A DNA stretch of 64,000 nucleotides from Dendrobates tinctorius (taxonomy: Eukaryota): the NCBI RefSeq assembly GCF_039654945.1, contig NW_027361677.1, positions 18,042,001-18,106,000 of the forward strand, written 5' to 3'. Under the pieces are notes generated by a model. The model ran no database searches and was not told the DNA's origin. It saw only the letters and a list, made by a program, of their open reading frames with translations. Positions 4,005 through 36,100 of this stretch are shown piece after piece. The translations under genes and the position numbers were made by a program. Each line of letters begins with the position of its first letter. The first letter of the stretch is position 1.

Positions 4005-4358
4005 ATGAAGAGCACTGCAGGCAGGCACAGGCTGTACCGGGAGTACATCGCCCACTATGAGGCCGGGAGCCATGAAGGCCATGTGGCACTGTGCAGGGCC
4101 GACGTTCACCTGGGCAGGGGCGACGTTCACCTGGGCAGGGGCGACGTTCACCAGGTCGGGGGCGACGTTCACCAGGGCGACTGCCCCGCAGCCCTGGGGG
4201 AAAACTACGCTCAGCTCATCAGACAGACCCTGCAGAGCACAAAGCTGGAGCAGAAGGTGGAGGCGCTGAAGCAGATGATGAAGGGGTTTGCAGTCCTGGA
4301 GCTGATCTGTGTCAACTTATTTCTGTTCCCATGGAGGAAAGAGATCAGGACACTGAAG
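4005..4358 (+). CDS. SPATA2-like gene, coding exon 1 (118 codons)
   Basis: ATG at 4005; ends ...ACACTGAAG|gtagga; encodes NLFLFPWRKEIRTLK. Confidence 0.85.
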
Positions 4359-7300
4359 GTAGGAAAAGCAGGGAAGGGGAGGCGAAACGAAGGGGAAGCG
4401 CTGGGGAGGCGAAACAAAGGGGAAGCGCAGGGGAGGCGAAACGAAGGGGAAGCTCTGGGGAGGCGAAACGAAGGGGAAGCGCTGGGGAGGCGAAGCGAAG
4501 GGGAAGCACAGGGGAGGCGAAACGAAGGGGAAGCGAAACGAAGGGGAAGCGCTGGGGAGGCAAAACAAAGGGGAAGCGCTGGGGAGGCAAAACAAAGGGG
4601 AAGTGCTGGGGAGGCGAAACGAAGGGGAAGCGCTGGGGAGGCGAAACGAAGGGGAAGCGCTGGGGAGGCGAAGCGAAGGGGAAGCGCTGGGGAAGCGAAA
4701 CGAAGGGGAAGCGCTGGGGAAGCGCTGGGCAAGCGAAACGAAGGGGAAGCGCTGGGGAAGCGCTAGGGAGGTGAAACAAAGGGGAAGCGCTGAGGAGGGG
4801 AAGCGCTAGGGAGGCGAAACAAAGGGGAAGCGCTAGGGAGGCGAAACGAAGGGGAAGCGCTGGGGAGGCGAATCGAAGGGGAAGAGCAGGGGAGGCGAAA
4901 CGAAGGGGAAGCGCTGGGGAGGCGAAACGAAGGGGAAGCACAAGGGAGGTGAAACGAAGGGGAAGCACAGGGGAAGGCGAATCGAAGGGGAAGAGCAGGG
5001 GAGGCGAAACAAAGCAGAAGTGCTGGGGAGGCAAAACGAAGTGGAGGCGAAATGAAGGGGAAGCACTGGGGAGGCGAAACAAAGGGGAAGCACAGGGGGA
5101 GGCGAATTGAAGGGGAAGAGCAGGGGAGGCGAAACAAAGCGGAAGTGCTAGGGAGGCGAAACGAAGGGGAAGCAGTGGGGAGGCGAAAAGAAGGTGAAGC
5201 ACAGGGGGGGGGAAATCGCTGGGGGAGGGAAAGCAAAGGGTCAGAGTAGGTGGAGGCAATGTGCATGGGAGGCAAAGCCCAGGGGAAAGGAAAGCAGGGA
5301 AATGGGAAGAACACGGGAGGAGAAGGGGGAGCACAGCACAGGGGAGTAGTGCAGGGGAGGCGAAGCGCATGGGAGGTGAAGAGCACATGAAGTAAAGTGC
5401 AGGGGCAGGGAAAGAGCAGTGGAGGCGATGTGCTGGGGAGGTGAAGGGCAGGGAAAATTGCACAGGGAGGGAAAGACCAGGGGAAGCAAAGAGCAGAGTA
5501 AAGGGGAAAGAGCAGAGGAGGTGATGTGCAGGGAAGGCGAAGCTCAGGGGGAGGGAAACAGTGGGGGAGGTGATGGGCAGAGGGTTCGTAAGCACAGGCA
5601 GAGGGTATGAGCAGGGGACGTGAAGCGCAGGTGAGACATACAATGGGGACTCGCCAGCTAAGGGCCCCTTTACATTTAGCGATGCACCAGCGATCCCGAC
5701 AACGATACGACCCGGTCAGGATCGCTGGTGCGTCGCTAAATGGTCGCTAGTGAGCTGCCACACAGGCAGATCTCACCAGCGATCAGCACCAGCGATAAGC
5801 CATCCGCCGGCGGTCGCTCTTACCTGTCACACGGCAGCGATGATGACGACTTCCGCCTGCGTCCATGCGTCGCTAGTCGGCGCCAGCGGGACGCCAACAA
5901 GAAAAAAATGGCCCAGGACGTTCCAGCACGATCAGCGATTTCCAGCGGGGGGGGGCGGTCGCAGGTACGTGTCACATGTAGCTACAAAGTCGGTGGCGCG
6001 CTAGCGATCTCGCTATGTGAGAAGGGGGCTTAAGCCTCAACTTTAAGAGCTAATTTGACCCATGAGAGCTCGACATTTTCAGCATGGAGGTGCGACCACC
6101 GGGACCTGCACCAATCAGCAAAACGGGGAACTTTTAGGGTATGCGGATTTTTCCGCAGAATCCACAGGTCAAAATGCCTGCGTTTTACCTGCGGATTTTG
6201 TGTGGATTTCACCTGCGTTTGTACGTCTGCGGAATCACTTTTTTCCAGCAGCCCCATAGAGAATGAATGGAATGGCTGCCGGGCGTCCAACCTGCCGCTC
6301 TGTTATGTAAAAATTCCATATTCTGCCAATCGTTGCAGGTCCCATCGGTCGACCCCTAACGGATCACTAAGATATCACTGACCCTGCAGAAAGGTAATAA
6401 CTTGTCTTTACAGGACAACCCCTTTGAAAGGGTATTCAAGCCCACAAAAAAAGATATGCAGGATTAGAAAAATCAACAGCACCCCAAAAGTCCACTGGTT
6501 GTGTTTGGTATTACAGCTGAGATCCATTGGTGGATCTTCTGTTCGCTACTGTATATAGAAGTGTTATCAATCATTGTACAGGAGGAGGAGGAGGTGAGCT
6601 GTGACATCACCTATTGTGAATGGTGGATCCTGTGTTATCTACTGTATATAGAGGTGTTATCAGTCATTGTATAGGAGGAGGGGGAGGGGAGCTGTGACAT
6701 CACCTATTGAGAATGGTGGATCCTGTTATCTACTGTATATAGAGGTGTTATCGGTCATTGTACAGGAGGAGGAGGTGAGCTGTGACATCACCTATTGTGG
6801 ATGGTGGATCCTGTTATCTACTGTATATAGAGGTGTTATCGGTCATTGTACAGGAGGAGGAGGTGAACTGTGACATCACCTATTGTGAGTGGTGGATCCT
6901 GTGTCATATACTGTATATAGAGGTGTTATCAGTCATTGTACAGGAGGAGGAGGTGAGCTGTGACATCACCTATTGTGAATGGTGGATCCTGTGTTATCTA
7001 CTGTATATAGAGGAGATATCAGTCATTGTACAGGAGGAGGTGAGCTGTGACATCACCTATTGTGAATGGAGGATTCTGTGTTATCTGCTGTATATAGAGG
7101 TGTTATCAGTCATTGTATAGGAGGAGGTGAGCTGTGACATCACCTATTGTGAATGGTGGATCCTGTTATCTACTGTATATAGAGGTGTTATCGGTCATTG
7201 TACAGGAGGAGGAGGTGAACTGTGACATCACCTATTGTGAATGGTGGATCCTGTGTAATCTACTGTATATAGAAGTGTTATCAGTCATTGTACACGAGGA

Positions 7301-10300
7301 GGAGGAGGTGAGCTGTGACATCGCCTATTGTGAATTCCTTCCGAATGGAAGAACAGTGTTTCAACATCATCTAAAAAAAAATCCCTGGAGTGAGAGATCT
7401 GTAATCAGCCGATTCACAACAGCACCGAGCTCAGAGTAACAAAATAGGATCTGTCAACAGCATCTTGTTAGGGGCTTCCAGACCTAGTACATGCCATTAT
7501 TTTAAATACTGGAGATATTTAAAGGACAAAACTTTTTTTTTTCATTTGAGGAGACCCTGATTATTAACCGCCCATTGTGTGGAGTTTTCTGTATTTAGCT
7601 CTAGGGATAGTGATCTTATCAGTTTAGGTTCTGTTATTTTGAGTTTACAAAACACCGATTACAGGAAGAGGCGATGACATCACCGGAGGAAGGAAAGCTG
7701 CAGATTTATCCTAGAAACTAAAGGCCACCTGTGTTACAATGCAAAATAAAAGATGTCAGTGTATTAACATATTTTAAAGGGCTGGTAACATTAAAAAAAA
7801 ATCCACTGCGTTATGATTTTTTTGCCTTTTTTATTGCCTTTCTCTTTCTCTGCTGTGGCTCATTTTCTCTGTAGCGACTCATATCTGCAGTGTTTTTTTT
7901 TCTCTGCAGCTGCTCTTTCTCTGCAGCGGCTCTTTCTCTGCTGCGGCTCTTTCTCTGCAGCTGCTCTCTTTCTCTGCAGCAGCTCTTTCCCTGCAGCAGC
8001 TCTCTTTCTCTGCAGCAGCTCTTTCCCTGCAGCAGCTCTCTTTCTCTGCTGAGGCTCTTTTTCTCTGCAGCGGCTCTTTTTCTCTGCAGCAGCTCTTTCC
8101 CTGCAGCAGCTCTCTTTCTCTGCTGAGGCTCTTTTTCTCTGCAGCGGCTCTTTTTCTGCTGCGGCTCTGTTTCTCTGCATCGGCTCTTTCTCTGCAGCTG
8201 CTCTCTTTCTCTGCAGTGGCTCTTTCCCTGCAGCAGCTCTCTTTCTCTGCTGAGGCTCTCTTTCTCTGCAGCTGCTCTCTTTCTCTGCAGTGGCTCTTTC
8301 CCTGCAGCAGCTCTCTTTCTCTGCAGCTGCTCTTTTTCTCTGCAGTGGCTTTTGTTCTGCAGCTCTCTTTCTCTGCAGCTGCTCTTTTTCTCTGCTGCGG
8401 CTTTTTTTCTGTAGTGGCTCTTTCTCTGCAGCTGCTCTCTTTCTCTGCAGTGGCTCTTTCCCTGCAGCAGCTCTCTTTCTCTGCTGAGGCTCTTTTTCTC
8501 TGCAGTGGCTCTTTCCCTGCAGCAGCTCTCTTTCTCTGCAGTGGCTCTTTCCCTGCAGCAGCTCTCTTTCTCTGCAGCTGCTCTTTTTCTCTGCAGTGGC
8601 TTTTGTTCTGCAGCTCTCTTTCTCTGCATCGGCTCTTTCTCTGCAACTGCTCTTTTTCTCTGCTGCGGCTTTTTTTCTGTAGCGGCTCTTTCTCTGCAGC
8701 AGCTCTGTCTCTGCTGAGGCTCTCTTTCTCTGCTGCGGCTCTTTTTCTCTGCAGCTGCTCTTTCTCTGCAGCTGCTCTCTTTCTCTGCATCGGCTCTTTC
8801 TCTGCATCGGCTCTCTTTCTCTACAGCGGCTCTTTTTCTCTGCTGCGGCTCTCTTTTTCTGCTGCGGCTCTTTCTCTGCAGCTGCGGCTTTTTCTCTGCA
8901 GTGGCTCTCTTTCTCTGCTGAGGCTCTCTTTCTCTGCATCAGCTCTTTCTCTGCAGCGGCTCTTTCTCTGCAGCTGCTCTTTTTCTCTGCAGTGGCTCTT
9001 TCCCTGCAGCTGCTCTCTTTCTCTGCAGCGGCTCTTTTTCTCTGCTGCAGCTCTTTCTCTGCTGCGGCTCTTTTTCTCTGCTGCGGCTCTCTTTTTCTGC
9101 TGCGGCTCTTTCTCTGCAGCTGCGGCTTTTTCTCTGCAGTGGCTCTCTTTCTCTGCTGAGGCTCTCTTTCTCTGCATCAGCTCTTTCTCTGCAGCGGCTC
9201 TTTCTCTGCAGCTGCTCTTTTTCTCTGCAGTGGCTCTTTCCCTGCAGCTGCTCTCTTTCTCTGCAGCGGCTCTTTTTCTCTGCTGCAGCTCTTTCTCTAC
9301 AGCGGCTCTTTTTCTCTGCTGCGGCTCTCTTTTTCTGCTGCGGCTCTTTCTCTGCAGCTGCGGCTTTTTCTCTGCAGTGGCTCTCTTTCTCTGCTGAGGC
9401 TCTCTTTCTCTGCTGAGGCTCTTTCTCTGCAGCGGCTCTTTCTCTGCAGCTGCTCTTTTTCTCTGCAGTGGCTCTTTCCCTGCAGCTGCTCTCTTTCTCT
9501 GCAGCGGCTCTTTTTCTCTGCTGCAGCTCTTTCTCTGCTGCGGCACTCTTTCTCTGCATCAGCTCTTTCTCTGCAGCGGCTCTTTCTCTGCAGCTGCTCT
9601 TTTTCTCTGCTGCAGCTCTTTCTCTGCTGCGGCACTCTTTCTCTGCATCAGCTCTTTCTCTGCAGCGGCTCTTTCTCTGCAGCTGCTCTTTTTCTCTGCT
9701 GCAGCTCTTTGCAGCTGCTCTCTTTCTCTGCATCAGCTCTTTCTCTGCAGCTGCTCTTTTTCTCTGCTGCAGGTCTTTTTCTCTGCTGCGGCTCTTTTTC
9801 TGCTGCAGCTCTCTTTCTCTGCTGCGGCTCTTTTTCGCTGCAGCTGCTCTTTCTCTGCAGCTGCTCTCTTTCTCTGCATCGGCTCTTTCTCTTCAGCTGC
9901 TCTTTTTCTCTGCAGTGGTTCTTTCTCACCCATCCAGATACATCCAGTTGGTTTTATTTTGTTTATTTTTGCTATAATATAATTTCATGTTTTTGTTTTT
10001 GCAGAAATTTACTGGGACTTTTGTCTATTTTATTCAACCTGTCATCCCAGAAGATGCCATCAGGCAAATCCTCCAACGAGTGGGTTACTCGATAGTGTCC
10101 AACACGGAATATACAATTGGAGGCAGGATAAATAGTGAGGAAGCCAAGCAGACGGCCTTCGACTTGTATCTATCGAGAATTCAGTGTGAAAATATGCTTT
10201 GGCGCCTCAATGAAGATAAATCCGTCTCCGTAAGTCTTTTGGTTCCTGGGCCTGGCCATGAAGCAAAACATGGGAGTGATCCTACTGGCCAAACTGGTAA

Positions 10301-11207
10301 AAATACCAGTGGACCTGATGAAATGCAAAATTTAAATCTTAAAAGCAACGACCCTATAAAAGCCGCGGAGATGACCGTAACCCATACGAGCAGCCAGGAC
10401 GACGTCTCTGATCTTTCGGAAGAGAAGCCACGTTATTATACCAAGCGCATGGACAGCGATGAGTTCCTCTACAACTACAGTGACCTCAACTTGGCCCAAC
10501 GGCCAATTTTCCCATTACATATGAAGCCAACAAAGTGGGTAGCTCCAGTCTCCGAAGAACCAAACTTTGCCAAACCTGATATTCCTGATGGATCAGCCAA
10601 GATCGAGGGCAGAGACCTTGCCGAGAAGATCATTTATGACCTACAAGGTGACAACATTGACATAACGACTTTTTCGGAACAGCTGGACCTTCCGAAATCT
10701 CTGGTGTCTAATGAGTCTCCTGCTGAAGTCATCGCGCCGACCAAGCAAGAGCGCGTGGTGTCCAAACTAAAGATGCTGAACATGTCCGGAGAGTCGTTGA
10801 CTTACCCTATCGAGGAAACGGCGGCGCCCGGCTCGGCAAAGTTATCTGAAAGCAGCGATCTGGGCAAAATTGAGGTCAAGTGGGCATTCCTGACAACTAA
10901 GGAGGGCACAGAGAGCTTTGCCAGTCCGATGTCCCCATCTTCTGATTTCTCCATGTTGAATATTTCTGGCAACTCACCGATTTGGACTCCAGGTACCGAT
11001 CATAGGCTCCGAGAGCCACCCAACTCCACATACATTCCACCACGGGCACCGGAAACCGAGCGTATGAGATCGCCAAATATCAAAGCAGAGGAACATCACT
11101 TCCAGGTCTCTTCTCCATCCGGAGATGCCCTTCTGGATAATGAGTATAATATACATGAAGATATCAAGGAGGACTACGTGATGATCACCAAAAAGGACCA
11201 AAACTGA
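4005..11207 (+). CDS. SPATA2-family (PUB-like domain) protein, 518 aa, join(4005..4358,10005..11207); likely a third paralog distinct from SPATA2 and SPATA2L
   Basis: The spliced product contains LELICVNLFLFPWRKEIRTLK|KFTGTFVYFIQPV...ILQRVGY...AFDLYLSRIQCE, the SPATA2/Tamozhennic PUB signature. Phase-0 GT-AG intron; 1557 nt with no internal stop. Confidence 0.85.
4372..5260. repeat. 27-bp G/A-rich minisatellite (GGGGAGGCGAAACGAAGGGGAAGCGCT), decaying toward ~5640
   Basis: Visible tandem units starting about 13 nt after the exon 1 donor. Confidence 0.95.
5662..6030. mobile_element. PIF/Harbinger-type MITE
   Basis: TAA|GGGCCCCTTTACATTTAGCGAT ... ATCTCGCTATGTGAGAAGGGGGCT|TAA; 3-bp TAA target duplication; same family as the nest at 39328-40439. 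Confidence 0.8.
6527..7335. repeat. ~90-bp tandem repeat (GAGGTGTTATCAGTCATTGTACAGGAGGAGGAGGTGAGCTGTGACATCACCTATTGTGAATGGTGGATCCTGTGTTATCTACTGTATATA), about 9 units
   Basis: Visible tandem units; the same unit recurs at 15385-15640. Confidence 0.95.
7840..9925. repeat. 18-21-bp pyrimidine-rich minisatellite (TTTCTCTGCAGCTGCTCT variants), ~2.1 kb
   Basis: Visible tandem units ending about 80 nt before the exon 2 acceptor. Confidence 0.95.
10005..11207 (+). CDS. SPATA2-like gene, coding exon 2 (400 codons plus stop)
   Basis: Acceptor ttttgtttttgcag|AAATTTACT; long non-repetitive ORF ending ...EDYVMITKKDQN* (TGA 11205-11207). Confidence 0.9.
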   Translation, partial: KFTGTFVYFIQPVIPEDAIRQILQRVGYSIVSNTEYTIGGRINSEEAKQTAFDLYLSRIQCENMLWRLNEDKSVSVSLLVPGPGHEAKHGSDPTGQTGKNTSGPDEMQNLNLKSNDPIKAAEMTVTHTSSQDDVSDLSEEKPRYYTKRMDSDEFLYNYSDLNLAQRPIFPLHMKPTKWVAPVSEEPNFAKPDIPDGSAKIEGRDLAEKIIYDLQGDNIDITTFSEQLDLPKSLVSNESPAEVIAPTKQERVVSKLKMLNMSGESLTYPIEETAAPGSAKLSESSDLGKIEVKWAFLTTKEGTESFASPMSPSSDFSMLNISGNSPIWTPGTDHRLREPPNSTYIPPRAPETERMRSPNIKAEEHHFQVSSPSGDALLDNEYNIHEDIKEDYVMITKKDQN

Positions 11208-11263
11208 GTCTGATGGACGGGGCTGCGTACTCTGTATGCAGGGAGGTCACCGATGCTGTGCAG

Positions 11264-11282
11264 TAGCGCCACCTAGTGGTGG
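11264..11282 (-). promoter_or_regulatory. CTCF consensus site in the SPATA2-like 3' UTR
   Basis: Reverse strand reads CCACCACTAGGTGGCGCTA, a close match to the CTCF core CCASYAGRKGGCGC. Confidence 0.5.
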
Positions 11283-11579
11283 GTGAAGAAAGAAGTTTTT
11301 TTGCCTTTCCAAGCGAATTCCAGCTCTGAATCAGAATATTGGAGCGCCAATTGTTAGAAATGGTAGCCAAAGCCAAAACTCAGGGTTTTTCTGAAGACAA
11401 CATCATGAGCAGTAGACATTTTATTTTTACCTAAACTTTTTCTTTGCACTTTGTCCAGAATGGAAAGTTATGAAACTTTGCAAATAACATAACTTTTTTG
11501 GGGGATTTGTCTAGTCCTTGAACAAAAAAAAAAAAAAAAATCTGAATTTTCTCCAGTCTATTTAGATGCATTGGATCAG

Positions 11580-12110
11580 ACTGCTTTGGAGTACAGATGA
11601 TGGCAGTGATGTTTCAGCTCAGCACCTGTGTCTCACTAACTGGGGAGAACCTGCGGCAGGAGAGGAGACGGGATCTCACCCATCACTGCCATCATCTGTA
11701 CTCCGAATGAGAACATTCTGATATCAATGCCGCAAATAGACTAGGGAAAAGGTTTGGAAGCCACTTGCAAGTATTTTTTACAGGAATAAAGTGGTTTCTC
11801 ATCTCCTGCTTTTCCCCCAATCTATTTCCTGCATGGATATGAGAACGTACTCATTTGGAGTACAGATGATGGCAGTAATAGGTCAGCTCGTCTCCTCCTC
11901 TGAATGTTCTGATTTTCAGCCGATTCCCAGAGTTAGGCCACATTCACATGCTCAGTATCTGGTCAGTATTTTGCATCAGTATTTGTAAGCCAAGACCAGT
12001 GATACAGGTGCTGAGCTGATCCATCACTGCCATCATCTGTACTCCATAGGAGTACGTCCTGATATCAGTGCAGCTGTGGGCAGAAAATAGTCTGGGGAAA
12101 GTGATTTTTA
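11580..12110. repeat. Two short inverted-repeat cassettes (TGGAGTACAGATGATGGCAGTGAT and its complement), MITE-like, in or near the 3' UTR
   Basis: Arm pairs at ~11585/11682 and ~11850/12023. The second pair is interrupted by a TTA|GGCCACATTCACA Harbinger-like fragment at ~11933. Confidence 0.65.
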
Positions 12111-15334: not shown

Positions 15335-18300
15335 CTAAAAATCAGAAAAGGGAGAATGACACAAGTACTGAGAATGCAAATCTGGGTACAGGAGGAGGAT
15401 GAGGTGAGCTATGATATCACCTATATATTTAATGGTGGATCCTGTGTTATCTACTGTATATAGAGGTGTTATCAGTCATTGTACAGGAGGAGGAGGTGAG
15501 CTGTGACATCGTCTATTGTTAATGGTGGATCCTGTGTTATCTACTGTAAATAGAGGTGTTATCAGTCTGTACAGGAGGAGGAGGTGAGCTGTGACATCAT
15601 CTATTGTAAATGGTGGATGCCTGAGTTATCAGTCACTATAATCCTGTCTGTGATGATAATTAGCCTGCTGAAAATGTATTCATATAGAGCCGGAAGCATG
15701 AGACTAGTATTAGGACCTGTTACATGGATAAGGTTTAAAAGTTGCCATAAGAATTATTAAAAAAAACAATATTTAAAAATATATATCTTCTATGGCTGTT
15801 GCACTATATGGAAATGACCTGAAATACCTGGATTTGGCTCTGAACTTTCATGCATTTCATTTTTAATGCATTTTCAACTGAATATAATTGTACCAAACCC
15901 TCAGCTGTGAGAAGTATTAGGACCATGCAGACTTTCAGACATCTGAACGTGAGCCTGATTTTTCACATTCACTGAAAATCGGAGCTTTTACAAATATGAA
16001 GGAATCAAAATGCAACATAAACTCCAGAACTTCATTATACAATTAGTTTAGATGTCCCAACTTTTTAAAGGTTCGATCCCTCAGGAGGGAGGGGGTGCAA
16101 TATCTCTGCTTGCTTTTCTTTTACTGGAAGCTTCAGTCGGGGTGTAATAAGTAGAAATACTTACGAGTACCGGCGCCGGCACTGGAAACGAGCTCCGATC
16201 AATCAGCCACTCTTCATAGAGGCGGTGGATGGCGCTCAGGTACTCCTGCAAGAGAAAGGCACGTCCGGGGCTGGGACTTGTACTCACATCCTTGTTTAAT
16301 AAGAAGCATCTAATACATGAGCACAAAGGCCCCCGCGGAGCAGCACGACCTAATCCCCGGCCGACTTCTCCCCTGATCCCCATCCGACTACTCTCTCGAT
16401 CCCCGGCCGACTTCTCCCCCGAAACCAGGCCGACTTCTCCCCTGATCCCCATCCGACTACTCTCTCGATCCCCGGCCGACTTCTCCCCCGAAACCAGGCC
16501 GACTTCTCCCCTGATCCCCATCCGACTACTCTCTCGATCCCCGGCCGACTTCTCCCCCGATCCCCATCCGACTACTCTCTCGATCCCCGGCCGACTTCTC
16601 CCCCGATCCCCATCCGACTACTCTCTCGATCCCCGGCCGACTTCTCCCCCGATCCCCATCCGACTACTCTCTCGATCCCCGGCCGACTTCTCCCCCGATC
16701 CCCATCCGACTACTCTCTCGATCCCCGGCCGACTTCTCCCCCGATCCCCATCCGACTACTCTCTCGATCCCCGGCCGACTTCTCCCCCGAAACCAGGCCG
16801 ACTTCTCCCCTGATCCCCATCCGACTACTCTCTCGATCCCCGGCCGACTTCTCCCCCGATCCCCATCCGACTACTCTCTCGATCCCCGGCCGACTACTCT
16901 CTCGATCCCCGGCCGACTTCTCCCCCGATCCCCATCCGACTACTCTCTCGATCCCCGGCCGACTTGTCCCCCGATCCCCATGAGCTCCTGCCATTATTGT
17001 ACAGCATTATTGTCCCCTCTGATCTCCGCTACCTGCTCCATTACTGCTCTCAAACCAAACACTGACCCCTTTCATTCATGGCACTGCGCCGGCTACTTGT
17101 GCTGTAGACGAGACTGTACTGGGCTAATGCCGCAGCAATGGCAAGAGCCGCACAGGACGGATGTGCGCGATATTCTGCAGGGATGTCAATGGTATGAGAC
17201 TGCTGTAAGCTGCACATGACTGATCATTTTAAAAGGCCAATTCAGACGACCGTAATGTGATGCTACCGGGAATTACCGCCGTACAACAGCCACTAAAATG
17301 TGGTTGTCTGAATTAGCCCTTAGAGAAAAAGTCATCTCCTGGTCACAGGATAGGGGATAGCCTACAGATTGCAGGAAGTCAGAAGACTGCTGGGACCCCT
17401 CCACCGTGATAGATCAGGGCTATCCGCTCTGCAGGGACCCATCTTGTCCGCACATGCCCGACCTCTGAATCCGCTCTGCAGAGCCCCATCTTGTCTGCGC
17501 ATGCTCAACCTCTAAATCCGCTCTGCAGAGCCCCATCTTGCCTGCGCATGCGCAACCTCTAAATCTGCTCTGCAGAACCCCATCTTGTCTGCGCCTGCCC
17601 TACAGTGATGATCAAGGGGTTAAAAGACCAGAATCAGAGCCTTCCCCCTATCCTGGACATTGGATCAGAAGCTCAGCAGTCAATGCAGAGGTGGCACAAA
17701 ACACCCACACAAAACTTGCAAGCTGCTGTAAAAAGCCATGCTTGTGGCTATTAAGGGGTTAAACAGACCTTAAACAAAACAAGATAGGTGGTAACTTATT
17801 GATTGCATGAGGTCCGACCCCTGGGGCCTGCACCGGTCGGCAGCGCACATGCCCGACTGCTGCTCAGTTCATTCTCTATGGAGATGCCAAGTGCTGGGCT
17901 ACGTCCAGGAGCCACATGGAGAAGCGGTCAGGCATAATAGTGCCACGTTCTGCTGATAAGTGCGAGTCCTAGCAGTCGGACCCCCACCATTGAATAAGTT
18001 GTCGCTTATCCGCTGGATAGATGATTACTGTACAGCCCCTTTAAGCAATGTGCATGCAATTATGACAAGGCTCTTAGAGGGTCTCACCAGTGGGATAACC
18101 CGCTCTTCCTCTCTGCACCTCATCTTTAGTCTCTGGTAGCACGTTTCAGGGGATGTGCGCAGATAAACTGTGAAAAAAAGTGCACATGACAGTATTATTA
18201 TGCCAAATTTTCCTAAAATCCACCTGAATAGGTGCTGGATTATGAGATATTCCGAATTATCCTCTTGGAAGAATATGAAAAAAAAAACCATTAGGGAAAA

Positions 18301-19438: not shown

Positions 19439-22400
19439 GGTATATATAAAATCGATACCACAAAATTAAAGGGGGTTTCCTATAATCAATCACAACCACA
19501 GGAAGGGCAATGCGTATCACATTGCTGGGGGTCCGGCCACTCGGGTATCCACTGAGATGATCGGTGAATGTCCCCTTGGTGAGACCCCCTTGTGGCATAA
19601 AGACCCCCTGTAGTGTAACAACCTATTTTATTGTGCTTCTGGCTACTGAGGGGATATCTTCAGTCCTAGGATGCAGGCGGCCTCACCGATGGCTTGGTGT
19701 GGACATCCAGCATTGTGAGCTGCACATAGGTCTGCAGCGTTAACCCCCATCTCGTTGGATCCGTGTACATGAGACCCTGAAGAAAGTATAAAGAATATGA
19801 ACTAATAAGAACACAGCGGTAATATAGCCGGCACAAGGTATATGACAGCGGTAATACAACTGGCACAGTGTATACGACGGCTGTAATGCAACCGGCACAA
19901 GGTATATGACGGCGGTAATGCAACCGGCACAGGGTATACGGTGGCAGTAATACAATCGGCACAGGGTATACGACGGCTATAATGCAACCGGCACAAGGTA
20001 TATGACGGCGGTAATGCAACCGGCACAGGGTATAGAGCGGTGGTAATGCAACCGACACAGGGTATACGGTGGCAGTAATACAATCGGCACAGGTTATACA
20101 GCGGCGGTATTACAACCGGCACAGGGTATACGGTGGCGGTAATACAATCGGCACAGGGTATACAGCGGCGGTATTACAACCGGCACAGGGTATACGGTGG
20201 CGGTAATACAATCGGCACAGGTTATACAGCGGCGGTATTACAACCGACACAGGGTATACGGTGGCGGTAATACAATCGGCACAGGGTATACAGCGGCGGT
20301 ATTACAACCGGCACAGGGTATACGGTGGCGGTAATACAATCGTCACAGGGTATACAGCGGCGGTATTACAACCGGCACAGGGTATACGGTGGCGGTAATA
20401 CAATCGGCACAGGTTATACAGCGGCGGTATTACAACCGGCACAGGGTATACGGTGGCGGTGATACAATCGGCACAGGGTATACAGCGGTGGTATTACAAC
20501 CGGCACAGGGTATATGGTGGCGGTAATACAATCGGCACAGGTTATACAGCGGCGGTATTACAACCGGCACAGGTTATACAGCGGCGGTAATACAATCGGC
20601 ACAGGTTATATAGCGGCGGTATTACAACCGGCACAGGGTATATGGTGGCGGTAATACAATCAGCACAGGTTATACAGCGGCGGTATTACAACCGGCACAG
20701 GGTATACAGTGGCGGTAATACAATTGGCACAGGGTATACAGCGGCGGTAATGCAACCGACACAGGGTATACGGTGGCGGTAATACAATCGGCACAGGTTA
20801 TACAGCAGCGGTAATGCAACCGACACAGGGTATACGGTGGCGGTAATACAATCGGCACAGGTTATACAGCGGCGGTATTACAACCGGCACAGGGTATACG
20901 GTGGCGGTAATACAATCGCCACAGGGTATACAGCGGCGGTATTACAACCGGCACAGGGTATACGGTGGCGGTAATACAATCGGCACAGGTTATACAGCGG
21001 CGGTATTACAACCGGCACAGGGTATACAGTGGCGGTAATACAATCGGCACAAGTTATACAGCGGCGGTAATGCAACTGACACAGGGTATACGGTGGCGGT
21101 AATACAATCGGCACAGGTTATACAGCGGTGGTATTACAACCGACACAGGGTATTTGATGGCGATATAACCGGCACAGGGTATACAGCGGCGGTATTACAA
21201 CCGGCACAGGGTATTCGATGGCGGTAATATAACTGGCACAGGGAACACGGCAGCAGTAATATAACAGGCACAGCGTACACGGTGGCGGTAACATAACCGG
21301 CACATGTATAGGAATATGAGATTGTACGATAACTCACCAGTGGATTGTGGCCTTGGACATTTCTCCATTTTGCAACAGGCTCCATCATAACCTTAAAAAT
21401 ACATCAATATATTAAAGGACAATTGCTAAGCAGAATGACTGCGATTCTCAAGGGCACAGAAGAAGTCTTCTTCATCTACATCCTTCTGTGGGCTCTGGGG
21501 AGGAGGACACGGATTCTGTAACCTATCGGCACCCTGAGTTTCGGGGAAAGGAGGTGGGAAATGGGCAGCTGCATGTGTGCAAATGGCAAGTCAACCCTTT
21601 ACATGCTGCTGACAGTGATTGACAGCAGCGTCTAAACGCTTGATCAACTGTGATCAGAGTTCGCTCTGATCGCTGCTGTCGGGAGACAGGTGGTGGATGT
21701 GCCACACTACCTTATGAAGACATACCTTGACATCAGGGTGGGTGAAGGGGTTAATAAACCAGTCCTATAGTACACGAATATATATGGTGATTACCTCGAG
21801 GTTGGCAGTATTGGAGAAATATTCGAGACAGCTGGTTTTTCCACTCGCTATGTTTCCCTCCACACAGATCTAAAAAGGAAGGATTGAAAGGAGACTTTTC
21901 TTTAAATTCTGCAAACGCAGTGCGGCATATATACGTATAATGTTATAATGAACGACACTTACGGTGCTTTTACCTTTGTTTTTCAAACCATTAGCTAGAG
22001 AGAAGGGAAAAAATATTAAGAGACTATTATTTTTATTTGTATTATTTATTATTTTTATTTATCAACTTTGATGTAATCATAAATCAGCTGAGAAGAACTC
22101 AGAAAAAGACAGATAAAAGATCCAAAAACTCTTAACAAATGAGACTGAGCTCACTGATGGAGCCTCAGTTAACTCATTCTGCAGCCAGTAATATACACAG
22201 AGGCTACACAACGCAAACATTGCAACATTTTTAATGAAGCACAGTGAAAATCATTTTTAGCCCAATAGACGTGCATTTAACCCCTTTTCGACTTTGGATG
22301 TATAGATATGTCCAAGCTAGTCTCCCTGACTTTGAGGCGGGTTCTGGCCTTGAGCCCGCATCTTTCCGCCACGTCATTCAAAAGTACAGAAAAAAACAAA

Positions 22401-23895: not shown

Positions 23896-26115
23896 ATGTG
23901 TGACCCCCCCCCTCTCCATCCACCTCTATGGGAGCAGTGTAATGTGTGACCCCCCCCCTCTCCATCCACCTCTATGGGAGCAGTGTAATGTGTGACCCCC
24001 CCTCTCCATCCACCTCTATGGGAGCAGTGTAATGTGTGACCCCCCTCTCCATCCACCTCTATGGGAGCAGTGTAATGTGTGACCCCCCCTCTCCATCCAC
24101 CTCTATGGGAGCAGTGTAATGTGTGACCCTCCCCCTCTCCATCCACCTCTATGGGAGCAGTGTAGTGTGTGACCCCCCCTCTCCATCCACCTCTATGGGA
24201 GCAGTGTAGTGTGTGACCCCCCCTCTCCATCCACCTCTATGGGAGCAGTGTAGTGTGTGACCCCCCCTCTCCATCCACCTCTATGGGAGCAGTGTAATGT
24301 GTGACCCCCCTCTCCATCCACCTCTATGGGAGCAGTGTAATGTGTGACCCCCCCTCTCCATCCACCTCTATGGGAGCAGTGTAATGTGTGACCCTCCCCC
24401 TCTCCATCCACCTCTATGGGAGCAGTGTAATGTGTGACCCCCCTCTCCATCCACCTCTATGGGAGCAGTGTAATGTGTGACCCCCCCTCTCCATCCACCT
24501 CTATGGGAGCAGTGTAATGTGTGACCCCCCTCTCCATCCACCTCTATGGGAGCAGTGTAATGTGTGACCCCCCCTCTCCATCCACCTCTATGGGAGCAGT
24601 GTAATGTGTGACCCCCCTCTCCATCCACCTCTATGGGAGCAGTGTAATGTGTGACCCCCCCTCTCCATCCACCTCTATGGGAGCAGTGTAATGTGTGACC
24701 CCCCCCTCTCCATCCACCTCTATGGGAGCAGTGTAATGTGTGACCCCCCTCTCCATCCACCTCTATGGGAGCAGTGTAATGTGTGACCCCCCCTCTCCAT
24801 CCACCTCTATGGGAGCAGTGTAATGTGTGACCCCCCCTCTCCATCCACCTCTATGGGAGCAGTGTAATGTGTGACCCCCCCTCTCCATCCACCTCTATGG
24901 GAGCAGTGTAATGTGTGACCCCCCCTCTCCATCCACCTCTATGGGAGCAGTGTACTGTGTGACCCCCCTCTCCATCCACCTCTATGGGAGCAGTGTAATG
25001 TGTGACCCCCCCTCTCCATCCACCTCTATGGGAGCAGTGTAATGTGTGACCCCCCCTCTCCATCCACCTCTATGGGAGCAGTGTAATGTGTGACCCCCCC
25101 TCTCCGTCCACCTCTATGGGAGCAGTGTAATGTGTGACCCCCCCTCTCCATCCACCTCTATGGGAGCAGTGTAATGTGTGACCCCGCTCCATCCACCTCT
25201 ATGGGAGCAGTGTAATGTGTGACCCCCGCTCCATCCACCTCTATGGGAGCAGTGTAATGTGTGACCCCCGCTCCATCCACCTCTATGGGAGCAGTGTAAT
25301 GTGTGACCCCCGCTCCATCCACCTCTATGGGAGCAGTGTAATGTGTGATCCCGCTCCATCCACCTCTATGGGAGCAGTGTAATGTGTGATCCCGCTCCAT
25401 CCACCTCTATGGGAGCAGTGTAATGTGTGACCCCGCTCCGTCCACCTCTATGGGAGCAGTGTAATGTGTGACCCCCGCTCCGTCCACCTCTATGGGAGGA
25501 GTGTAATGTGTGACCCCGCTCCGTCCACCTCTATGGGAGGAGTGTAATGTGTGACCCCGCTTCGTCCACCTCTATGGGAGGAGTGTAATGTGTGACCCCG
25601 CCCCGTCCACCTCTATGAGAGCAGTAATGTGTGACCCCGCTCAGTCCACCTCTATGAGAGCAGTAATGTGTGACCCCGCTCCATCCACCTCTATGGGAGC
25701 AGTGTAATGTGTGACCCCGCTCCATCCACCTCTATGGGAGCAGTGTAATGTGTGACCCCGTTCCATCCACCTCTATGGGAGCAGTGTAATGTGTGACCCC
25801 GCTCCATCCACCTCTATGGGAGGAGTGTAATGTGTGACCCCGCTCCATCCACCTCTATGGGAGGAGTGTAATGTGTGACCCCGCTCCGTCCACCTCTATG
25901 GGAGTAGTGTAATGTGTGACCCTGCTCCGTCCACCTCTATGGGAGTAGTGTAATGTGTGACCCTGCTCCGTCCACCTCTATGGGAGCAGTGTAATGTGTG
26001 ACCCCCGCTCCGTCCACCTCTATGGGAGCAGTGTAATGTCTGACCCTGCTCCGTCCACTTCTGTGGGAGCAGTGGTGTAATATGTGCCCCCCCCTCCTCC
26101 ATCCACTTCTATGGA
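23896..26115. repeat. 42-45-bp minisatellite (TGTGTGACCCCCCCTCTCCATCCACCTCTATGGGAGCAGTGTAA), ~2.2 kb
   Basis: Visible tandem units just upstream of TK2 exon 1. Confidence 0.97.
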
Positions 26116-26351
26116 AGCACACACATGTATGCATACATCTTTACATAGCAAGGATAGAGAATGGTCTGACAGCCAGATCCAGGAGCCCCTTCTTCACAGA
26201 TTGTAATTCATAGTTCCGCCACTAGATGTCTCAATAACCAAAAGAATAGTAATCCTGGGGCTGCACTCATATAATGGTTCTTATTATAAGGGCCTGTGCA
26301 CATTCATCCTCTTCAGGATCAGGACTGGGGCTGGTTCTCGTCATCTCTGCA

Positions 26352-33151: not shown

Positions 33152-36100
33152 GTGAGTGCAGGACCCTCATCATCATCCTCATTCCCCCCCCTCATCATCA
33201 TCCTCATTCCCCCCCCTCATCATCATCCTCATTCCCCCCTCATCATCATCATCCTCATTCCCCCCTCATCATCATCATCATCATTCCCCCCTCATCATCA
33301 TCATCCTCATTCCCCCCCTCATCATCATCATCCTCATTCCCCCCTCATCATCATCATCCTCATTCCCCCCTCATCATCATCATCCTCATTCCCCCCTCAT
33401 CATCATCATCCTCATTCCCCCCTCATCATCATCATCCTCATTCCCCCCTCATCATCATCATCCTCATTCCCCCCTCATCATCATCCTCATTCCCCCCCCT
33501 CATCATCATCCTCATTCCCCCCTCATCATCATCATCCTCATTCCCCCCTCATCATCATCATCCTCATTCCCCCCTCATCATCATCATCCTCATTCCCCCC
33601 TCATCATCATCCTCATTCCCCCTCATCATCATCATCCTCATTCCCCCCTCATCATCATCATCCTCATTCCCCCCTCATCATCATCATCCTCATTCCCCCC
33701 TCATCATCATCATCCTCATTCCCCCCTCATCATCATCATCCTCATTCCCCCCTCATCATCATCCTCATTCCCCCCCCTCATCATCATCCTCATTCCCCCC
33801 TCATCATCATCATCCTCATTCCCCCCTCATCATCATCATCCTCATTCCCCCCTCATCATCATCATCCTCATTCCCCCCTCATCATCATCATCCTCATTCC
33901 CCCCTCATCATCATCATCCTCATTCCCCCCTCATCATCATCATCCTCATTCCCCCCTCATCATCATCATCCTCATTCCCCCCTCATCATCATCATCCTCA
34001 TTCCCCCCTCATCATCATCATCCTCATTCCCCCCTCATCATCATCCTCATTCCCCCCCCTCATCATCATCCTCATTCCCCCCTCATCATCATCATCCTCA
34101 TTCCCCCCTCATCATCATCATCCTCATTTCCCCCCTCATCATCATCCTCATTTCCCCCCATCATCATAATCCTCATTCCCCCCCATCATCATCATCCTCA
34201 TTCCCCCCATCATCATCATCCTCATTCCCCCCATCATCATCATCCTCATTCCCCCATCATCATCATCCTCATTCCCCCCATCATCATCATCCTCATTCCC
34301 CCCCATCATCATCATCCTCATCCCCCCCATCATCATCATCCTCATTCCCCCCCATCATCATCATCCTCATTCCCCCCCATCATCATCATCCTCATTCCCC
34401 CCCATCATCATCATCCTCATCCCCCCCCATCATCATCATCCTCATTCCCCCCATCATCATCATCCTCATTCCCCCCCTCATCATCATCCTCATTCACCCC
34501 CCTCATCATCATCCTCATTCACCCCCCTCATCATCATCCTCATTCACCCCCCTCATCATCATCCTCATTCACCCCCCTCATCATCATCCTCATTCACCCC
34601 CCTCATCATCATCCTCATTCACCCCCCTCATCATCATCCTCATTCACCCCCCTCATCATCATCCTCATTCCCCCCCCTCATCATCATCCTCATTCCCCCC
34701 CCTCATCATCATCCTCATTCCCCCCCTCATCATCATCCTCATTCCCCCCATCATCCATCACCCTCATTCCCCCTCATCTGATATCATCATCCTCATCCCC
34801 CCTCATCATCATCATCCTCATTCCCCCCTCATCATCCTTCATCTGATATCATCCTCATTCCCCCCCTCATCATCATCCTCATTCCCCCTCATAATCATCC
34901 CCCCCCATAATCACCCTCATCATCATCCCCCTCTCCCCTCATAATCATCATTCCCCTTGATCATCATCATCCCCCCCATCATCCTGCCAATTCTGTGCAC
35001 TTCCACCTACACCTGATGCCCAGTGCAGGCTGCTGCAGTTATGGATGATGATGGGTGATGTAGCTTCCATAGTCCCAAGCTGCATTACTCTTTTTTAACC
35101 CCAAAATGAGCATTTTCCAACGGTATCCTAAATAATGTGTTAATTATTGCTGCCCATGATTTGTTTTGCACCATGCACATTGCGGCCTTGTCGATCTATG
35201 TTGTGCGCATCCGTAATGAGGCATCTACGGGCACCTCAAATCCGCAGAGGTCTTGTGTATGAGGGACTGAATGGAGCACAATCGTTATCACTGTACAGGG
35301 GGAACTGGTAAGGGTGTGTGCACACGTTGCGGATTCCTGTGCGGATTTTTCTGCGCGGAATCTGCAGGTAAAATGACCTGCGTTTTAGCTGCTGATTTAC
35401 TGCAGATTTCGCCTGCATTTTTACACCTGAGGATTCCTAGAATGGAATAGGTGTAAAAAACGCTGCGGAATCCACACAAAGAATTGACATGCTGCGGAAA
35501 ATAAACCGCTGCGTTTCCACGTGGAATTTTCAGCATCATGTGCAGTGATTTCTGTTTTCCATAGGATAACATGGCACTGTACACCACATGGAAAACTGCT
35601 GCAGATCCGCAGGGCCAAATCCACAGCGTCTGCACATACCCTAAATGTTCCACGTTGGTTCAGGGTGAAATTTTTTGATGTTTTGATCCACTTGCCTCCA
35701 TCAAAACTTTTCTTGTTTTTATATATAGCGTCATCCATAGTTGTTTTTTTTTTCTCAAAACTTTTTGAAGTGTTTTTTTTCTGCTCCAAACGCAAAAAAA
35801 AAAATCTGAGTGGCAACGTGTTTTAATTGGGAATTGAGAGCAATTTTTTGAATAACTGTGCAGGAAAATAAGCAGCTCCTACTTCGTGAAAAAAAAACCT
35901 CTCTTCAGAACAGCCGTGTCGAAAAATATTTGTCCATGTGAAATCCAATTTTAACACAGATGACATATGTACACAAAATACACTCATCGGCCCCATTTAG
36001 ATGGACATTTTTCAGATTTGTGTTCTATGTTTTTCCTGCTTGTCTTTTTTTTTGCAGGCCGATTCTCTTCCCAAAAATGGGGACTGATCCTGTATATTGG

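What the first reader, a model, noticed from the sequence alone, without database searches (positions are those of the whole stretch)
4005..11207. Third SPATA2-family paralog: candidate CYLD-recruiting innate-immune/autophagy adaptor absent from the human locus
Seen: an intact 518-aa two-exon ORF with an N-terminal SPATA2-type PUB domain and ~330 aa of low-complexity tail. The tail has no cysteines, so it lacks the Cys-rich zinc fingers of SPATA2. Known: the SPATA2 PUB domain binds the deubiquitinase CYLD, and its PIM binds HOIP (LUBAC) in TNF/NOD signalling. Human SPATA2 (20q13) and SPATA2L (16q24) do not flank TK2. Inference: this is a separate paralog, probably lost in mammals. Its tail motifs (PIEET, LxIS, C-terminal LIR; listed separately) suggest it routes CYLD to TRAF/TBK1/ATG8 platforms rather than to LUBAC.
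Basis: partly seen in the sequence, partly recalled or inferred. Interest (0 to 1): 0.85.

Follow-up and report, generated by a model that had tools for sequence, protein, structure and literature searches.

The report
Unnamed third SPATA2-family gene, frog copy
This is the poison-frog copy of an ancient third relative of SPATA2 and SPATA2L; no paper on it turned up, it sits between BEAN1 and TK2 in jawed vertebrates from sharks to cattle, and no primate or rodent copy was found, so it is probably an unexplored adaptor for the deubiquitinase CYLD.

Summary
The gene has two exons (4005-4358 and 10005-11207, + strand). They encode a 518-aa protein identical to an "uncharacterized protein" of Dendrobates tinctorius. 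It has a SPATA2-type PUB domain (residues 1-190) and a disordered, cysteine-free tail.

RNA contigs confirm the splice junction. dN/dS against another frog is 0.27.

The "separate paralog" inference is supported. A tree of 48 proteins gives three well-supported gnathostome clades: SPATA2, SPATA2L and this one (database placeholder si:ch211-189a15.5). The order BEAN1 > gene > < TK2 is also seen in another frog, a bird and bowfin, and the gene-TK2 pair in a shark.

"Probably lost in mammals" is wrong. Platypus, wallaby and many placentals keep the gene. Only primates and rodents gave no hit.

Tail motifs:
- The ancestral HOIP-binding D-L-Y motif survives in sharks, coelacanth and sturgeon but has lost its Tyr in tetrapods.
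- Y-P-I-E-E-T (TRAF-like), R-E-P-P-x-S-x-Y-I-P-P and a C-terminal ATG13-like LIR are conserved from fish to frogs.
- The LxIS motifs are not conserved.

CYLD, TRAF and ATG8 binding remain untested inferences. I found no paper on the gene.

The same scan noted this stretch before (s1-364460, s1-364597, s1-364598).

The parts
4005..4358 (+). Exon 1 coding part, codons 1-118: N-terminal helices of the PUB-like domain up to ...PWRKEIRTLK
   Evidence: ATG at 4005 and GT donor at 4359. The N-terminus aligns with 22 anuran orthologs. Pfam PF21388 matches residues 83-118. RNA contigs carry its 3' end joined to exon 2.
4089..4178 (+). In-frame 21-bp tandem repeat, 4.3 copies, encoding D-V-H-L-G-R-G-like units (residues 33-58). 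It is a species-specific expansion inside a variable loop of the PUB domain.
   Evidence: Tandem Repeats Finder. Ranitomeya and Phyllobates have 2 units and other frogs have one. AlphaFold2 pLDDT is below 50 for residues 40-58.
4359..10004 (+). Intron 1 (GT..AG, phase 0), largely made of three minisatellites: 27-bp units at 4375-5215, 88-bp units at 6546-7335, and 19-bp units at 7845-9924
   Evidence: The junction is confirmed by RNA contigs.
10005..11207 (+). Exon 2 coding part, codons 119-518 plus stop: the rest of the PUB-like domain (to about residue 190, window 10220) and the disordered tail
   Evidence: RNA contigs cover it completely in four runs.
10452..10514 (+). Degenerate PIM-derived motif, residues 268-288, D-S-D-E-F-L-Y-N-Y-S-D-L-N-L-A-Q-R-P-I-F-P. 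It aligns with the S-I-D-L-Y-S-E-Y motif of shark copies, which resembles the D-L-Y-T motif of SPATA2 and SPATA2L.
   Evidence: Alignments. F272, Y276, D278, L279, A282, Q283 and P285 are invariant in 23 frogs. A short predicted helix covers 268-275.
10749..10820 (+). Conserved K-L-K segment followed by L-x-Y-P-I-E-E-T (residues 367-390). PIEET fits the TRAF2/3-type P-x-Q/E-E consensus.
   Evidence: P386, E388, E389 and T390 are invariant in frogs. Y-P-[IV]-x-E-[TS] is present in 4/4 cartilaginous fish, 23/26 ray-finned fish, 26/26 frogs, 13/16 other non-placental sarcopterygians and 0/30 placentals.
10956..10967 (+). It is not conserved. The second one, L-N-M-S, lies at 10776-10787.
   Evidence: Absent in Xenopus, Bombina, Spea, Pelobates and Discoglossus. 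LNMS is shared only with Phyllobates.
11007..11042 (+). Orphan motif L-R-E-P-P-N-S-T-Y-I-P-P (residues 453-464). It occurs in all 26 frogs and all four sharks and is the only lineage-specific tail motif still seen in placentals (10 of 30).
   Evidence: E455, P456, P457, S459, Y461, I462, P463 and P464 are invariant in frogs. It is present from sharks to armadillo and horse.
11157..11189 (+). C-terminal acidic LIR-like motif E-D-I-K-E-D-Y-V-M-I-T (residues 503-513)
   Evidence: D504, V510 and I512 are invariant in frogs, with consensus E-D-F-V-M-I-T. Related [FY]-V-x-[IVL] C-termini occur in sharks, ray-finned fish, coelacanth, salamander, reptiles and birds. The known ATG13 LIR is H-D-D-F-V-M-I-D-F and the ULK1 LIR is T-D-D-F-V-M-V-P-A (PMC5538626).
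11208..11875 (+). 3' untranslated region, at least to about 11875
   Evidence: One contig of run X21 spans 10003-11875 without a gap. The X1 and X2 contigs reach 11513 and resume at 11551.

Best explanation
Shown:
- The locus is the Dendrobates tinctorius ortholog of an ancient third member of the SPATA2 family. I found no paper on it. Databases carry it under the zebrafish-derived placeholder si:ch211-189a15.5, as 'uncharacterized protein', or wrongly as 'SPATA2L protein' or 'BEAN1 isoform'.
- The gene was already present in the common ancestor of jawed vertebrates. It has kept its place next to TK2 in all five species checked and downstream of BEAN1 in the four bony vertebrates.
- It is transcribed, spliced as predicted, and under purifying selection.
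- It encodes a SPATA2-type extended PUB domain followed by a disordered tail of about 330 residues that carries four conserved short motifs.

Inferred mechanism: it is a scaffold.
- The PUB domain binds the USP domain of CYLD, as the PUB domains of SPATA2 and SPATA2L do.
- The tail decides where that complex goes. The ancestral tail had a D-L-Y motif of the kind that docks SPATA2 into the HOIP PUB domain of LUBAC. In tetrapods, this frog included, the essential Tyr is replaced, so canonical LUBAC docking is probably lost.
- What remains conserved is a TRAF-type P-I-E-E-T motif, an orphan R-E-P-P-x-S-x-Y-I-P-P motif, and a C-terminal ATG13/ULK1-like LIR that would bind ATG8-family proteins, most likely GABARAPs.

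My odds: identity as a third paralog about 0.97; PUB-CYLD binding about 0.5; functional LIR about 0.5; TRAF binding about 0.35.
For: Identity
- An exhaustive profile search found 221 family members.
- The IQ-TREE tree (48 rows, 381 columns, hagfish outgroup) gives SPATA2 100/99, SPATA2L 100/100 and the third clade 100/97. The third clade is one group in 100% of 200 bootstrap trees, and its internal order follows the species tree: sharks, ray-finned fish, coelacanth, amphibians, sauropsids, mammals.
- The order BEAN1 > gene > < TK2 is seen in D. tinctorius, Phyllobates, a gull and bowfin. Gene > < TK2 is seen in a shark.

Domain
- Pfam PF21388, E = 7.6e-28.
- phmmer to the human SPATA2 PUB crystal structure 5LJM, E = 1e-20.
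- The AlphaFold2 model has pLDDT 80-96 over residues 1-38 and 62-190. Its best Foldseek match is 5LJM (TM 0.65 by target, 208 columns), followed by the HOIP and PNGase PUB domains.

CYLD surface
- SPATA2 Y114 and T115, whose mutation weakens CYLD binding (PMC5031558), correspond to F120 and T121 here.
- F at that position also occurs in genuine SPATA2 of elephant shark and fish, and in most SPATA2L, which binds CYLD.
- The block around these residues is among the most conserved in all three paralogs.

Functionality
- The exon 1-exon 2 junction appears in RNA contigs of runs X1, X2 and X21.
- A spliced transcript of another frog's ortholog exists.
- dN/dS is 0.27 overall, 0.19 in the PUB domain and 0.29 in the tail, at dS 0.71.

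Motifs
-.
- The LIR comparison rests on PMC5538626.
Against: - No binding was tested. All partner assignments rest on motif resemblance and homology.
- SPATA2 T94 is Leu here, and Y114 is Phe, so the hydroxyl is lost.
- Sharks have P-I-A-E-T, which breaks the Q/E position of the TRAF consensus.
- The C-terminal motif could equally be a SUMO-interacting motif or another beta-strand-adding motif.
- The still strongly conserved remainder of the former PIM region (Y-S-D-L-x-L-x-Q-x-P-I-F) shows that this region binds something. That could still be a PUB domain, so loss of LUBAC contact is not proven.
- Placental copies have lost the PIEET and C-terminal motifs, yet persist. The core function may therefore not need them.
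Confidence: 0.6

Rival explanations
1. It is a PUB-domain scaffold that does not work through CYLD. The PUB domain would bind another partner, for example p97/VCP or another protein through the pocket region. The tail motifs would serve a pathway unrelated to CYLD and ubiquitin editing.
For: The clade has been separate from SPATA2 and SPATA2L since before the shark-bony fish split. One pocket residue differs: T94 is Leu here. The tail motifs are unique to this clade: the SPATA2 and SPATA2L sequences checked lack the R-E-P-P motif, and only Monodelphis SPATA2L has a P-x-E-E-[TS] match. PUB domains of PNGase and UBXD1 bind p97 (structures listed).
Against: The segment holding the CYLD-relevant residues is nearly identical in all three paralogs: L-E, N-L-F-L, P-W-[RK]-K-E, K-[TK]-[FY]-T-G, F-V-Y. 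Both characterised paralogs bind CYLD (PMC5031558). The SPATA2 PUB domain does not bind PIM peptides.
Confidence: 0.25
2. It is still a LUBAC-linked CYLD adaptor like SPATA2. The altered motif D-S-D-E-F-L-x-x-Y-S-D-L would still dock into the HOIP PUB domain, or the frog-specific F-L-Y would restore a PIM-like Tyr.
For: The motif aligns with the D-L-Y of the shark, coelacanth and sturgeon copies, and D-L-Y-T is the PIM of SPATA2 and SPATA2L. It stays strongly conserved in tetrapods. The three dendrobatids (Dendrobates, Ranitomeya, Phyllobates) alone have a Tyr one position later, E-F-L-Y.
Against: The PIM Tyr is essential: even Y338F largely abolishes HOIP binding (PMC5031558). In tetrapods that position is Leu, and the Asp two residues before it is Glu or Phe depending on register. 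The dendrobatid Tyr is out of register and lacks the Asp.
Confidence: 0.12
3. It is a decaying or non-functional gene copy in this frog, or a relocated SPATA2L, rather than a working third gene.
For: An expanding 21-bp repeat sits in exon 1, and the intron is filled with minisatellites. I saw no anuran SPATA2L in a capped search.
Against: The ORF is intact. All family-invariant residues are kept. Spliced RNA is seen in several runs. dN/dS is 0.27. The repeat lies in a variable, disordered loop. The tree separates it from SPATA2L with full support, and both genes coexist in reptiles and a sloth.
Confidence: 0.03

Closest known systems
SPATA2 (human Q9UM82; PUB structure 5LJM)
   Same: Both have an N-terminal extended PUB-like domain (E = 1e-20, TM 0.65). 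The block with the CYLD-relevant residues is conserved. Overall size (about 520 aa) and layout match: PUB domain, then a disordered linker with a docking motif at a comparable position.
   Different: It is a separate gnathostome clade. The D-L-Y-T PIM is degenerate in tetrapod copies. The frog has no C-terminal Cys-rich module. It has three tail motifs (Y-P-I-E-E-T, R-E-P-P-x-S-x-Y-I-P-P, C-terminal F-V-M-I) that none of the SPATA2 sequences checked carries.
SPATA2L
   Same: It is the sister clade in the tree (94/81). It lies on the same chromosome-scale contig in gecko, bearded dragon and sloth. It has Phe at the Y114 position. SPATA2L is a known CYLD interactor.
   Different: SPATA2L keeps D-L-Y-[TR]-[DE], has Ser instead of Thr at the T115 position, and is shorter. 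The R-E-P-P and C-terminal motifs are absent from the SPATA2L checked, and only Monodelphis has a P-x-E-E-[TS] match. It sits at a different locus, not between BEAN1 and TK2.
si:ch211-189a15.5 (zebrafish placeholder) and its orthologs, such as Xenopus XB5732280 / LOC100145743
   Same: Same orthogroup by tree. In the species checked (two frogs, gull, bowfin, shark) it has the same neighbours. The fish, shark and amphibian copies share all or most of the tail motifs.
   Different: The frog copy has lost the small C-x-x-P-x-C-x-x-C cluster seen in fish, coelacanth, shark and some lizards. It has the tetrapod form of the former PIM. It carries a species-specific 7-residue repeat expansion in a PUB loop.
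ATG13 / ULK1 LIR motifs (GABARAP-preferring class)
   Same: The anuran consensus E-D-F-V-M-I-T shares the core D-F-V-M-I with ATG13 (H-D-D-F-V-M-I-D-F). It is close to ULK1 (T-D-D-F-V-M-V).
   Different: This is motif resemblance only. There is no homology of the proteins and binding is untested. D. tinctorius has Tyr instead of Phe.

Membership tests
SPATA2 family (Pfam PF21388, SPATA2_PUB-like) | Extended PUB-like domain at the N-terminus | tested here: met
   Pfam E = 7.6e-28. 5LJM by sequence, E = 1e-20, and by fold, TM 0.65 over 208 columns.
SPATA2 family | Conserved CYLD-contact residues (human Y114, T115) and actual CYLD binding | tested here: inconclusive
   F120 and T121 here. F/Y varies within genuine SPATA2, and F is usual in SPATA2L. 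Binding itself cannot be tested with these tools.
SPATA2 family | HOIP-binding PIM, D-L-Y-[TR] | tested here: not met
   The only D-L-Y in the frog protein (171-173) lies inside a PUB helix. The aligned tail position reads E-F-L. Shark, coelacanth and sturgeon copies of this clade do have D-[LI]-Y.
SPATA2 family | C-terminal Cys-rich (B-box-like) module | tested here: not met
   There is no Cys after residue 179 and no conserved Cys column in the frog tails. Shark copies keep CxxC pairs, with a weak zf-B_box hit.
SPATA2 orthogroup | Groups within the SPATA2 clade | tested here: not met
   The SPATA2 clade (100/99) excludes it. Dendrobatid frogs have a separate SPATA2.
SPATA2L orthogroup | Groups within the SPATA2L clade | tested here: not met
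   The SPATA2L clade (100/100) excludes it. Both genes coexist in Paroedura, Pogona, Sphenodon and Choloepus.
Third clade (si:ch211-189a15.5 orthogroup) | Groups within the clade, and lies between BEAN1 and TK2 | tested here: met
   Clade support 100/97, and one group in all 200 bootstrap trees. Synteny.
ATG8-interacting proteins (LIR-bearing) | Core [W/F/Y]-x-x-[L/I/V] preceded by acidic residues, in a disordered region, and conserved | tested here: met
   E-D-Y-V-M-I at 507-512. It is conserved in 26/26 frogs and in most non-mammalian copies. The region is disordered. Binding was not tested.
TRAF2/3-binding proteins | [PSAT]-x-[QE]-E motif, conserved and accessible | tested here: inconclusive
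   P-I-E-E-T is conserved in bony vertebrates except placentals, but sharks have P-I-A-E-T. Binding was not tested.
IRF3-recruiting adaptors (MAVS/STING/TRIF type) | Conserved pLxIS phospho-motif | tested here: not met
   LNIS is restricted to part of the Neobatrachia. LNMS occurs in D. tinctorius and Phyllobates only. Both are absent in Xenopus, Bombina, Spea and outside frogs.

The most novel reading that the evidence does not exclude
Most vertebrates, including zebrafish, Xenopus, birds, cattle, pig and horse, would have a third CYLD adaptor. In this reading it sends the deubiquitinase not to LUBAC but to TRAF-containing complexes and to ATG8-coated membranes. It would have escaped study only because it was lost in the primate-rodent lineage. 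Its ancestral form still had the LUBAC-docking motif, so the family would show a stepwise rewiring of one scaffold.
Probability: 0.3. Interest if true: 0.75.

Novelty: new member of a known kind. Interest (0 to 1): 0.55.

Why it matters
SPATA2 is the obligatory link between CYLD and LUBAC in TNF and NOD2 signalling. SPATA2L is its only recognised relative.

This work documents a third, equally old paralog with its own conserved docking motifs. Model and farm animals have it, but no primate or rodent copy was found. Two consequences follow:
- Results on CYLD regulation from mouse and human may not transfer fully to fish, frogs, birds or livestock.
- It gives a natural series for studying how a scaffold changes partners: D-L-Y kept in sharks, coelacanth and sturgeon, lost in tetrapods, and tail motifs lost in placentals.

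It also flags a recurring annotation error, in which this gene is fused to BEAN1 or named SPATA2L.

Tried and rejected
- **LxIS / MAVS-STING-like layout.** Rejected, because the two motifs are not conserved even among frogs.
- **Relocated SPATA2L or SPATA2.** Rejected by the tree and by coexistence in single genomes.
- **Pseudogene.** Rejected by expression, dN/dS and invariant residues.
- **Canonical PIM in the frog.** The only D-L-Y is inside a PUB helix.
- **KEAP1 (E-T-G-E) and ALIX (Y-P-x-L) readings of the Y-P-I-E-E-T region.** I considered these from memory and dropped them, because the required Gly-Glu or Leu positions are not conserved.
- **Literature.** No paper was found for ch211-189a15.5, XB5732280, LOC100145743 or LOC120980858, nor any description of a third SPATA2 paralog. 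Supplements and non-CC papers were not searched.
- **Naming two SPATA2L-clade proteins (P0140, P0165), to learn whether frogs have SPATA2L.** Unresolved. P0140 lies on a 1.56-Gb contig, as large as the salamander and Bombina contigs seen here. P0165 is not on record.
- **DNA of dendrobatid orthologs for a closer dN/dS.** Not available, because the files were too large. I used a Logan transcript of another frog instead.
- **Laying reads across the whole intron.** I did not do this. The gene exceeds the 6,000-letter limit and the intron is mostly long tandem repeats, so I laid exon 2 with flanks and read the junction from the loose ends.
- **First call of the look-up of sequencing runs.** It was unanswered because the machine was busy. 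The repeat worked.
- **Human or other primate DNA.** None was examined.

Full report

Yes.
- An ATG at 4005 opens a frame that runs to a GT donor at 4359. An AG at 10003-10004 precedes an in-frame continuation to a stop at 11205-11207.
- Joined, the two exons give 518 residues. These are identical to a database protein called "uncharacterized protein [Dendrobates tinctorius]". The window is therefore from the dyeing poison frog.
- Pfam's SPATA2_PUB-like model matches the end of exon 1 (profile 63-98) and the start of exon 2 (profile 100-163), with no gap at the junction. The whole protein scores E = 7.6e-28.
- Cysteines occur only at residues 30, 60, 102 and 179.
- The called neighbours are BEAN1 upstream on the same strand, ending near window position 212, and TK2 (dNK domain) downstream on the opposite strand, from about 15257.

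**2. Is it a working gene?**

Yes, on three lines of evidence.
- *RNA.* Contigs of runs X1, X2 and X21 align from 10003 onward. Before that point they carry unmatched letters that are exactly the last bases of exon 1 (...CATGGAGGAAAGAGATCAGGACACTGA). This proves the 4358|10005 junction. One contig continues to 11875, which sets a minimum 3' UTR.
- *A relative's transcript.* A 2,071-nt assembled transcript from another frog (SRR12112769) holds an uninterrupted 507-codon ortholog.
- *Selection.* Against that transcript, Nei-Gojobori dN/dS is 0.27 overall, 0.19 in the PUB domain and 0.29 in the tail. dS is 0.71, so it is not saturated.

Neither applies.

**3. What is it?**

I ran a profile of 23 anuran orthologs (alignment A1) against 1.84 billion representative proteins. 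It returned 221 family members. I took names from cluster look-ups and two further searches. A first tree of 130 rows and a careful IQ-TREE analysis (48 rows, 381 columns, hagfish outgroup) give three gnathostome clades:

| Clade | Support |
|---|---|
| SPATA2 | 100/99 |
| SPATA2L | 100/100 |
| Third clade, holding the frog protein | 100/97 |

- The third clade is recovered as one group in all 200 bootstrap trees.
- Its internal branching follows the species tree: sharks, ray-finned fish, coelacanth, amphibians, sauropsids, mammals.
- It is sister to SPATA2L with moderate support (94/81).
Tuatara also carries both genes.
- NCBI labels the shark and coelacanth members with the zebrafish placeholder si:ch211-189a15.5. 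UniProt uses the same name for a characin.
- The local gene order BEAN1 > gene > < TK2 recurs in Phyllobates, a gull and bowfin, where a MARVEL-domain gene follows. The gene-TK2 pair recurs in a shark.

**4.

*"Probably lost in mammals" does not hold.*
- Platypus and wallaby have the gene.
- A profile search found it in about 30 placental species of Perissodactyla, Cetartiodactyla, Carnivora, Afrotheria and Xenarthra. It is often annotated as "SPATA2L protein" or fused to BEAN1.
- No primate, rodent or lagomorph appeared. That search scored only the 8,000 best candidates, so absence is a lead, not a proof. I examined no human DNA.
- Placental copies sit on a long stem (0.88), end soon after the R-E-P-P motif, and lack the PIEET and C-terminal motifs. 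This suggests a change or relaxation of function before the apparent loss in the primate-rodent lineage.

*The LxIS motifs are not conserved.* L-N-I-S is limited to part of the Neobatrachia, and L-N-M-S occurs in D. tinctorius and Phyllobates only.

**5. Anatomy of the protein.**

*Fold.*
- AlphaFold2 with a 61-sequence alignment gives pLDDT 80-96 for residues 1-38 and 62-190.
- Residues 40-58 form a low-confidence loop.
- The tail is disordered apart from a short helix at 268-275.
- The best structural match is the human SPATA2 PUB domain 5LJM (TM 0.65 by target, 208 columns), followed by the HOIP and PNGase PUB domains.

*The loop.* It is encoded by a 21-bp in-frame tandem repeat (4089-4178, 4.3 copies). 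This frog has four units, Ranitomeya and Phyllobates have two, and other frogs have one.

*CYLD surface.*
- Mutating SPATA2 Y114 or T115 weakens CYLD binding (PMC5031558). These residues correspond to F120 and T121. N98 corresponds to N104 and T94 to L100.
- Phe at the Y114 position is also found in genuine SPATA2 of elephant shark and fish, and in most SPATA2L, itself a CYLD interactor.
- CYLD binding is therefore plausible but unproven.

**6. The tail.**

Four islands are conserved in an otherwise fast-evolving sequence.

- **(a) Residues 268-288 (former PIM).**
  - The sequence is D-S-D-E-F-L-Y-N-Y-S-D-L-N-L-A-Q-R-P-I-F-P.
  - In sharks the aligned segment reads S-I-D-L-Y-S-E-Y-T-D-I, in coelacanth V-D-L-Y-S-A-Y, and in sturgeon T-D-I-Y-A-A-Y.
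  - SPATA2, SPATA2L and hagfish all carry D-[LI]-Y-[TR] in their tails. This is the PIM that docks SPATA2 into the HOIP PUB domain, and its Tyr is essential: Y338F largely abolishes binding.
  - I read this island as the descendant of the family's PIM. Its Tyr is replaced in tetrapods (E-F-L) and in bowfin and teleosts (E-M-Q or E-M-R).
The continued conservation of the rest of the island means it still binds something.
- **(b) Residues 367-390.** A K-L-K segment is followed by L-x-Y-P-I-E-E-T. P-x-E-E-T fits the TRAF2/3 consensus (my own knowledge of that motif class). It is present in most ray-finned fish and in all frogs. It reads P-I-A-E-T in sharks and is absent in placentals.
- **(c) Residues 453-464.** R-E-P-P-N-S-T-Y-I-P-P is kept in all 26 frogs and all four sharks, and it alone persists in placentals (10 of 30). 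I know of no assigned partner.
- **(d) Residues 503-513.**
  - The sequence is E-D-I-K-E-D-Y-V-M-I-T, and the frog consensus is E-D-F-V-M-I-T.
  - The core equals the ATG13 LIR (H-D-D-F-V-M-I-D-F) and resembles ULK1 and ULK2. All three are GABARAP-preferring LIRs (PMC5538626).
  - Variants occur at or near the C-terminus in sharks, fish, coelacanth, salamander, reptiles and birds.

Fish, coelacanth, shark and some lizard copies also have a small C-x-x-P-x-C-x-x-C cluster, and sharks have further CxxC pairs. Frogs lack these, so the cysteine-free tail is a derived loss.

**7. Mechanism and confidence.**

*Shown:*
- identity as a third paralog, and synteny;
- expression and selective constraint;
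- the fold and the motif conservation.

*Inferred:*
- the PUB domain recruits CYLD;
- the tail directs the complex to TRAF-containing assemblies and ATG8-family proteins rather than to LUBAC.

The rivals are a CYLD-independent scaffold, retained LUBAC docking through the altered motif, and non-functionality. The last is contradicted by the data.

**8. Novelty.**

The gene models already exist in public databases. I found no paper that mentions the gene under any identifier I could search, and none that describes a third SPATA2 paralog. I file it as a new member of a known kind. It is of moderate interest to people working on CYLD and LUBAC and to comparative immunology.

The earlier notes of this scan on the PIEET/LxIS layout (s1-364597) and on the C-terminal LIR (s1-364598) were tested here. 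PIEET and the LIR hold up. The LxIS layout does not.

Noticed in passing
window 4089-4178: A 21-bp in-frame tandem repeat in exon 1 adds 7-residue units (D-V-H-L-G-R-G) to a PUB-domain loop. This species has four units, Ranitomeya and Phyllobates have two, and other frogs have one. RNA contigs break inside it.
   Followed up: partly
window 7845-9924: About 115 copies of a 19-bp unit (TTTCTCTGCAGCGGCTCT) fill the last 2 kb of intron 1 and end 80 bases before the real acceptor. Each unit looks like a pyrimidine tract followed by CAG, so the array reads like about 115 decoy 3' splice sites. The spliced RNA contigs seen all use 10005.
   Followed up: partly
window 9997: Contigs of runs X1, X2 and X21 match from 9997 onward but are preceded by at least 255 letters (ending ...CAGTGCTGTATTA) that occur nowhere in the window. 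There is no AG before 9997. This could be an intron insertion polymorphism, an assembly chimera or an unusual upstream exon. It is unexplained.
   Followed up: partly
proteins P0002, P0003 (Ranitomeya), P0220, P0224, P0239, P0240, P0147 (mammals): Gene models in a frog and several mammals fuse BEAN1 to this gene and are named 'BEAN1 isoform'. These are either read-through transcripts or a recurring annotation error. Other copies are misnamed 'SPATA2L protein'.
   Followed up: partly
window 1-64000 (e.g. 16353-16981, 19816-21304, 23907-26119, 33167-34836, 36078-38160, 41357-42733, 59928-60628): The window is unusually rich in long minisatellites with 26-88-bp units, many inside what should be TK2 introns. 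Several have strong GC skew.
   Followed up: no
window 11839-12004: Contig word depth in the four runs laid jumps 10- to 100-fold over a stretch just beyond the 3' UTR, with many loose ends. It is probably a high-copy transposable-element fragment.
   Followed up: no
search result: A profile search for SPATA2L returned reptiles, birds, mammals and lungfish but no frog. One SPATA2L-clade protein lies on a 1.56-Gb contig, as large as the salamander and Bombina contigs seen here. Whether anurans have lost SPATA2L, which would leave this gene as their only SPATA2L-side paralog, is open.
   Followed up: partly
loci L002, L003, L004: Intron 1 of this gene varies greatly in size. The whole gene spans 2.4 kb in bowfin, 4 kb in gull, 7.2 kb here, 22 kb in a shark and 54 kb in Phyllobates.
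   Followed up: no
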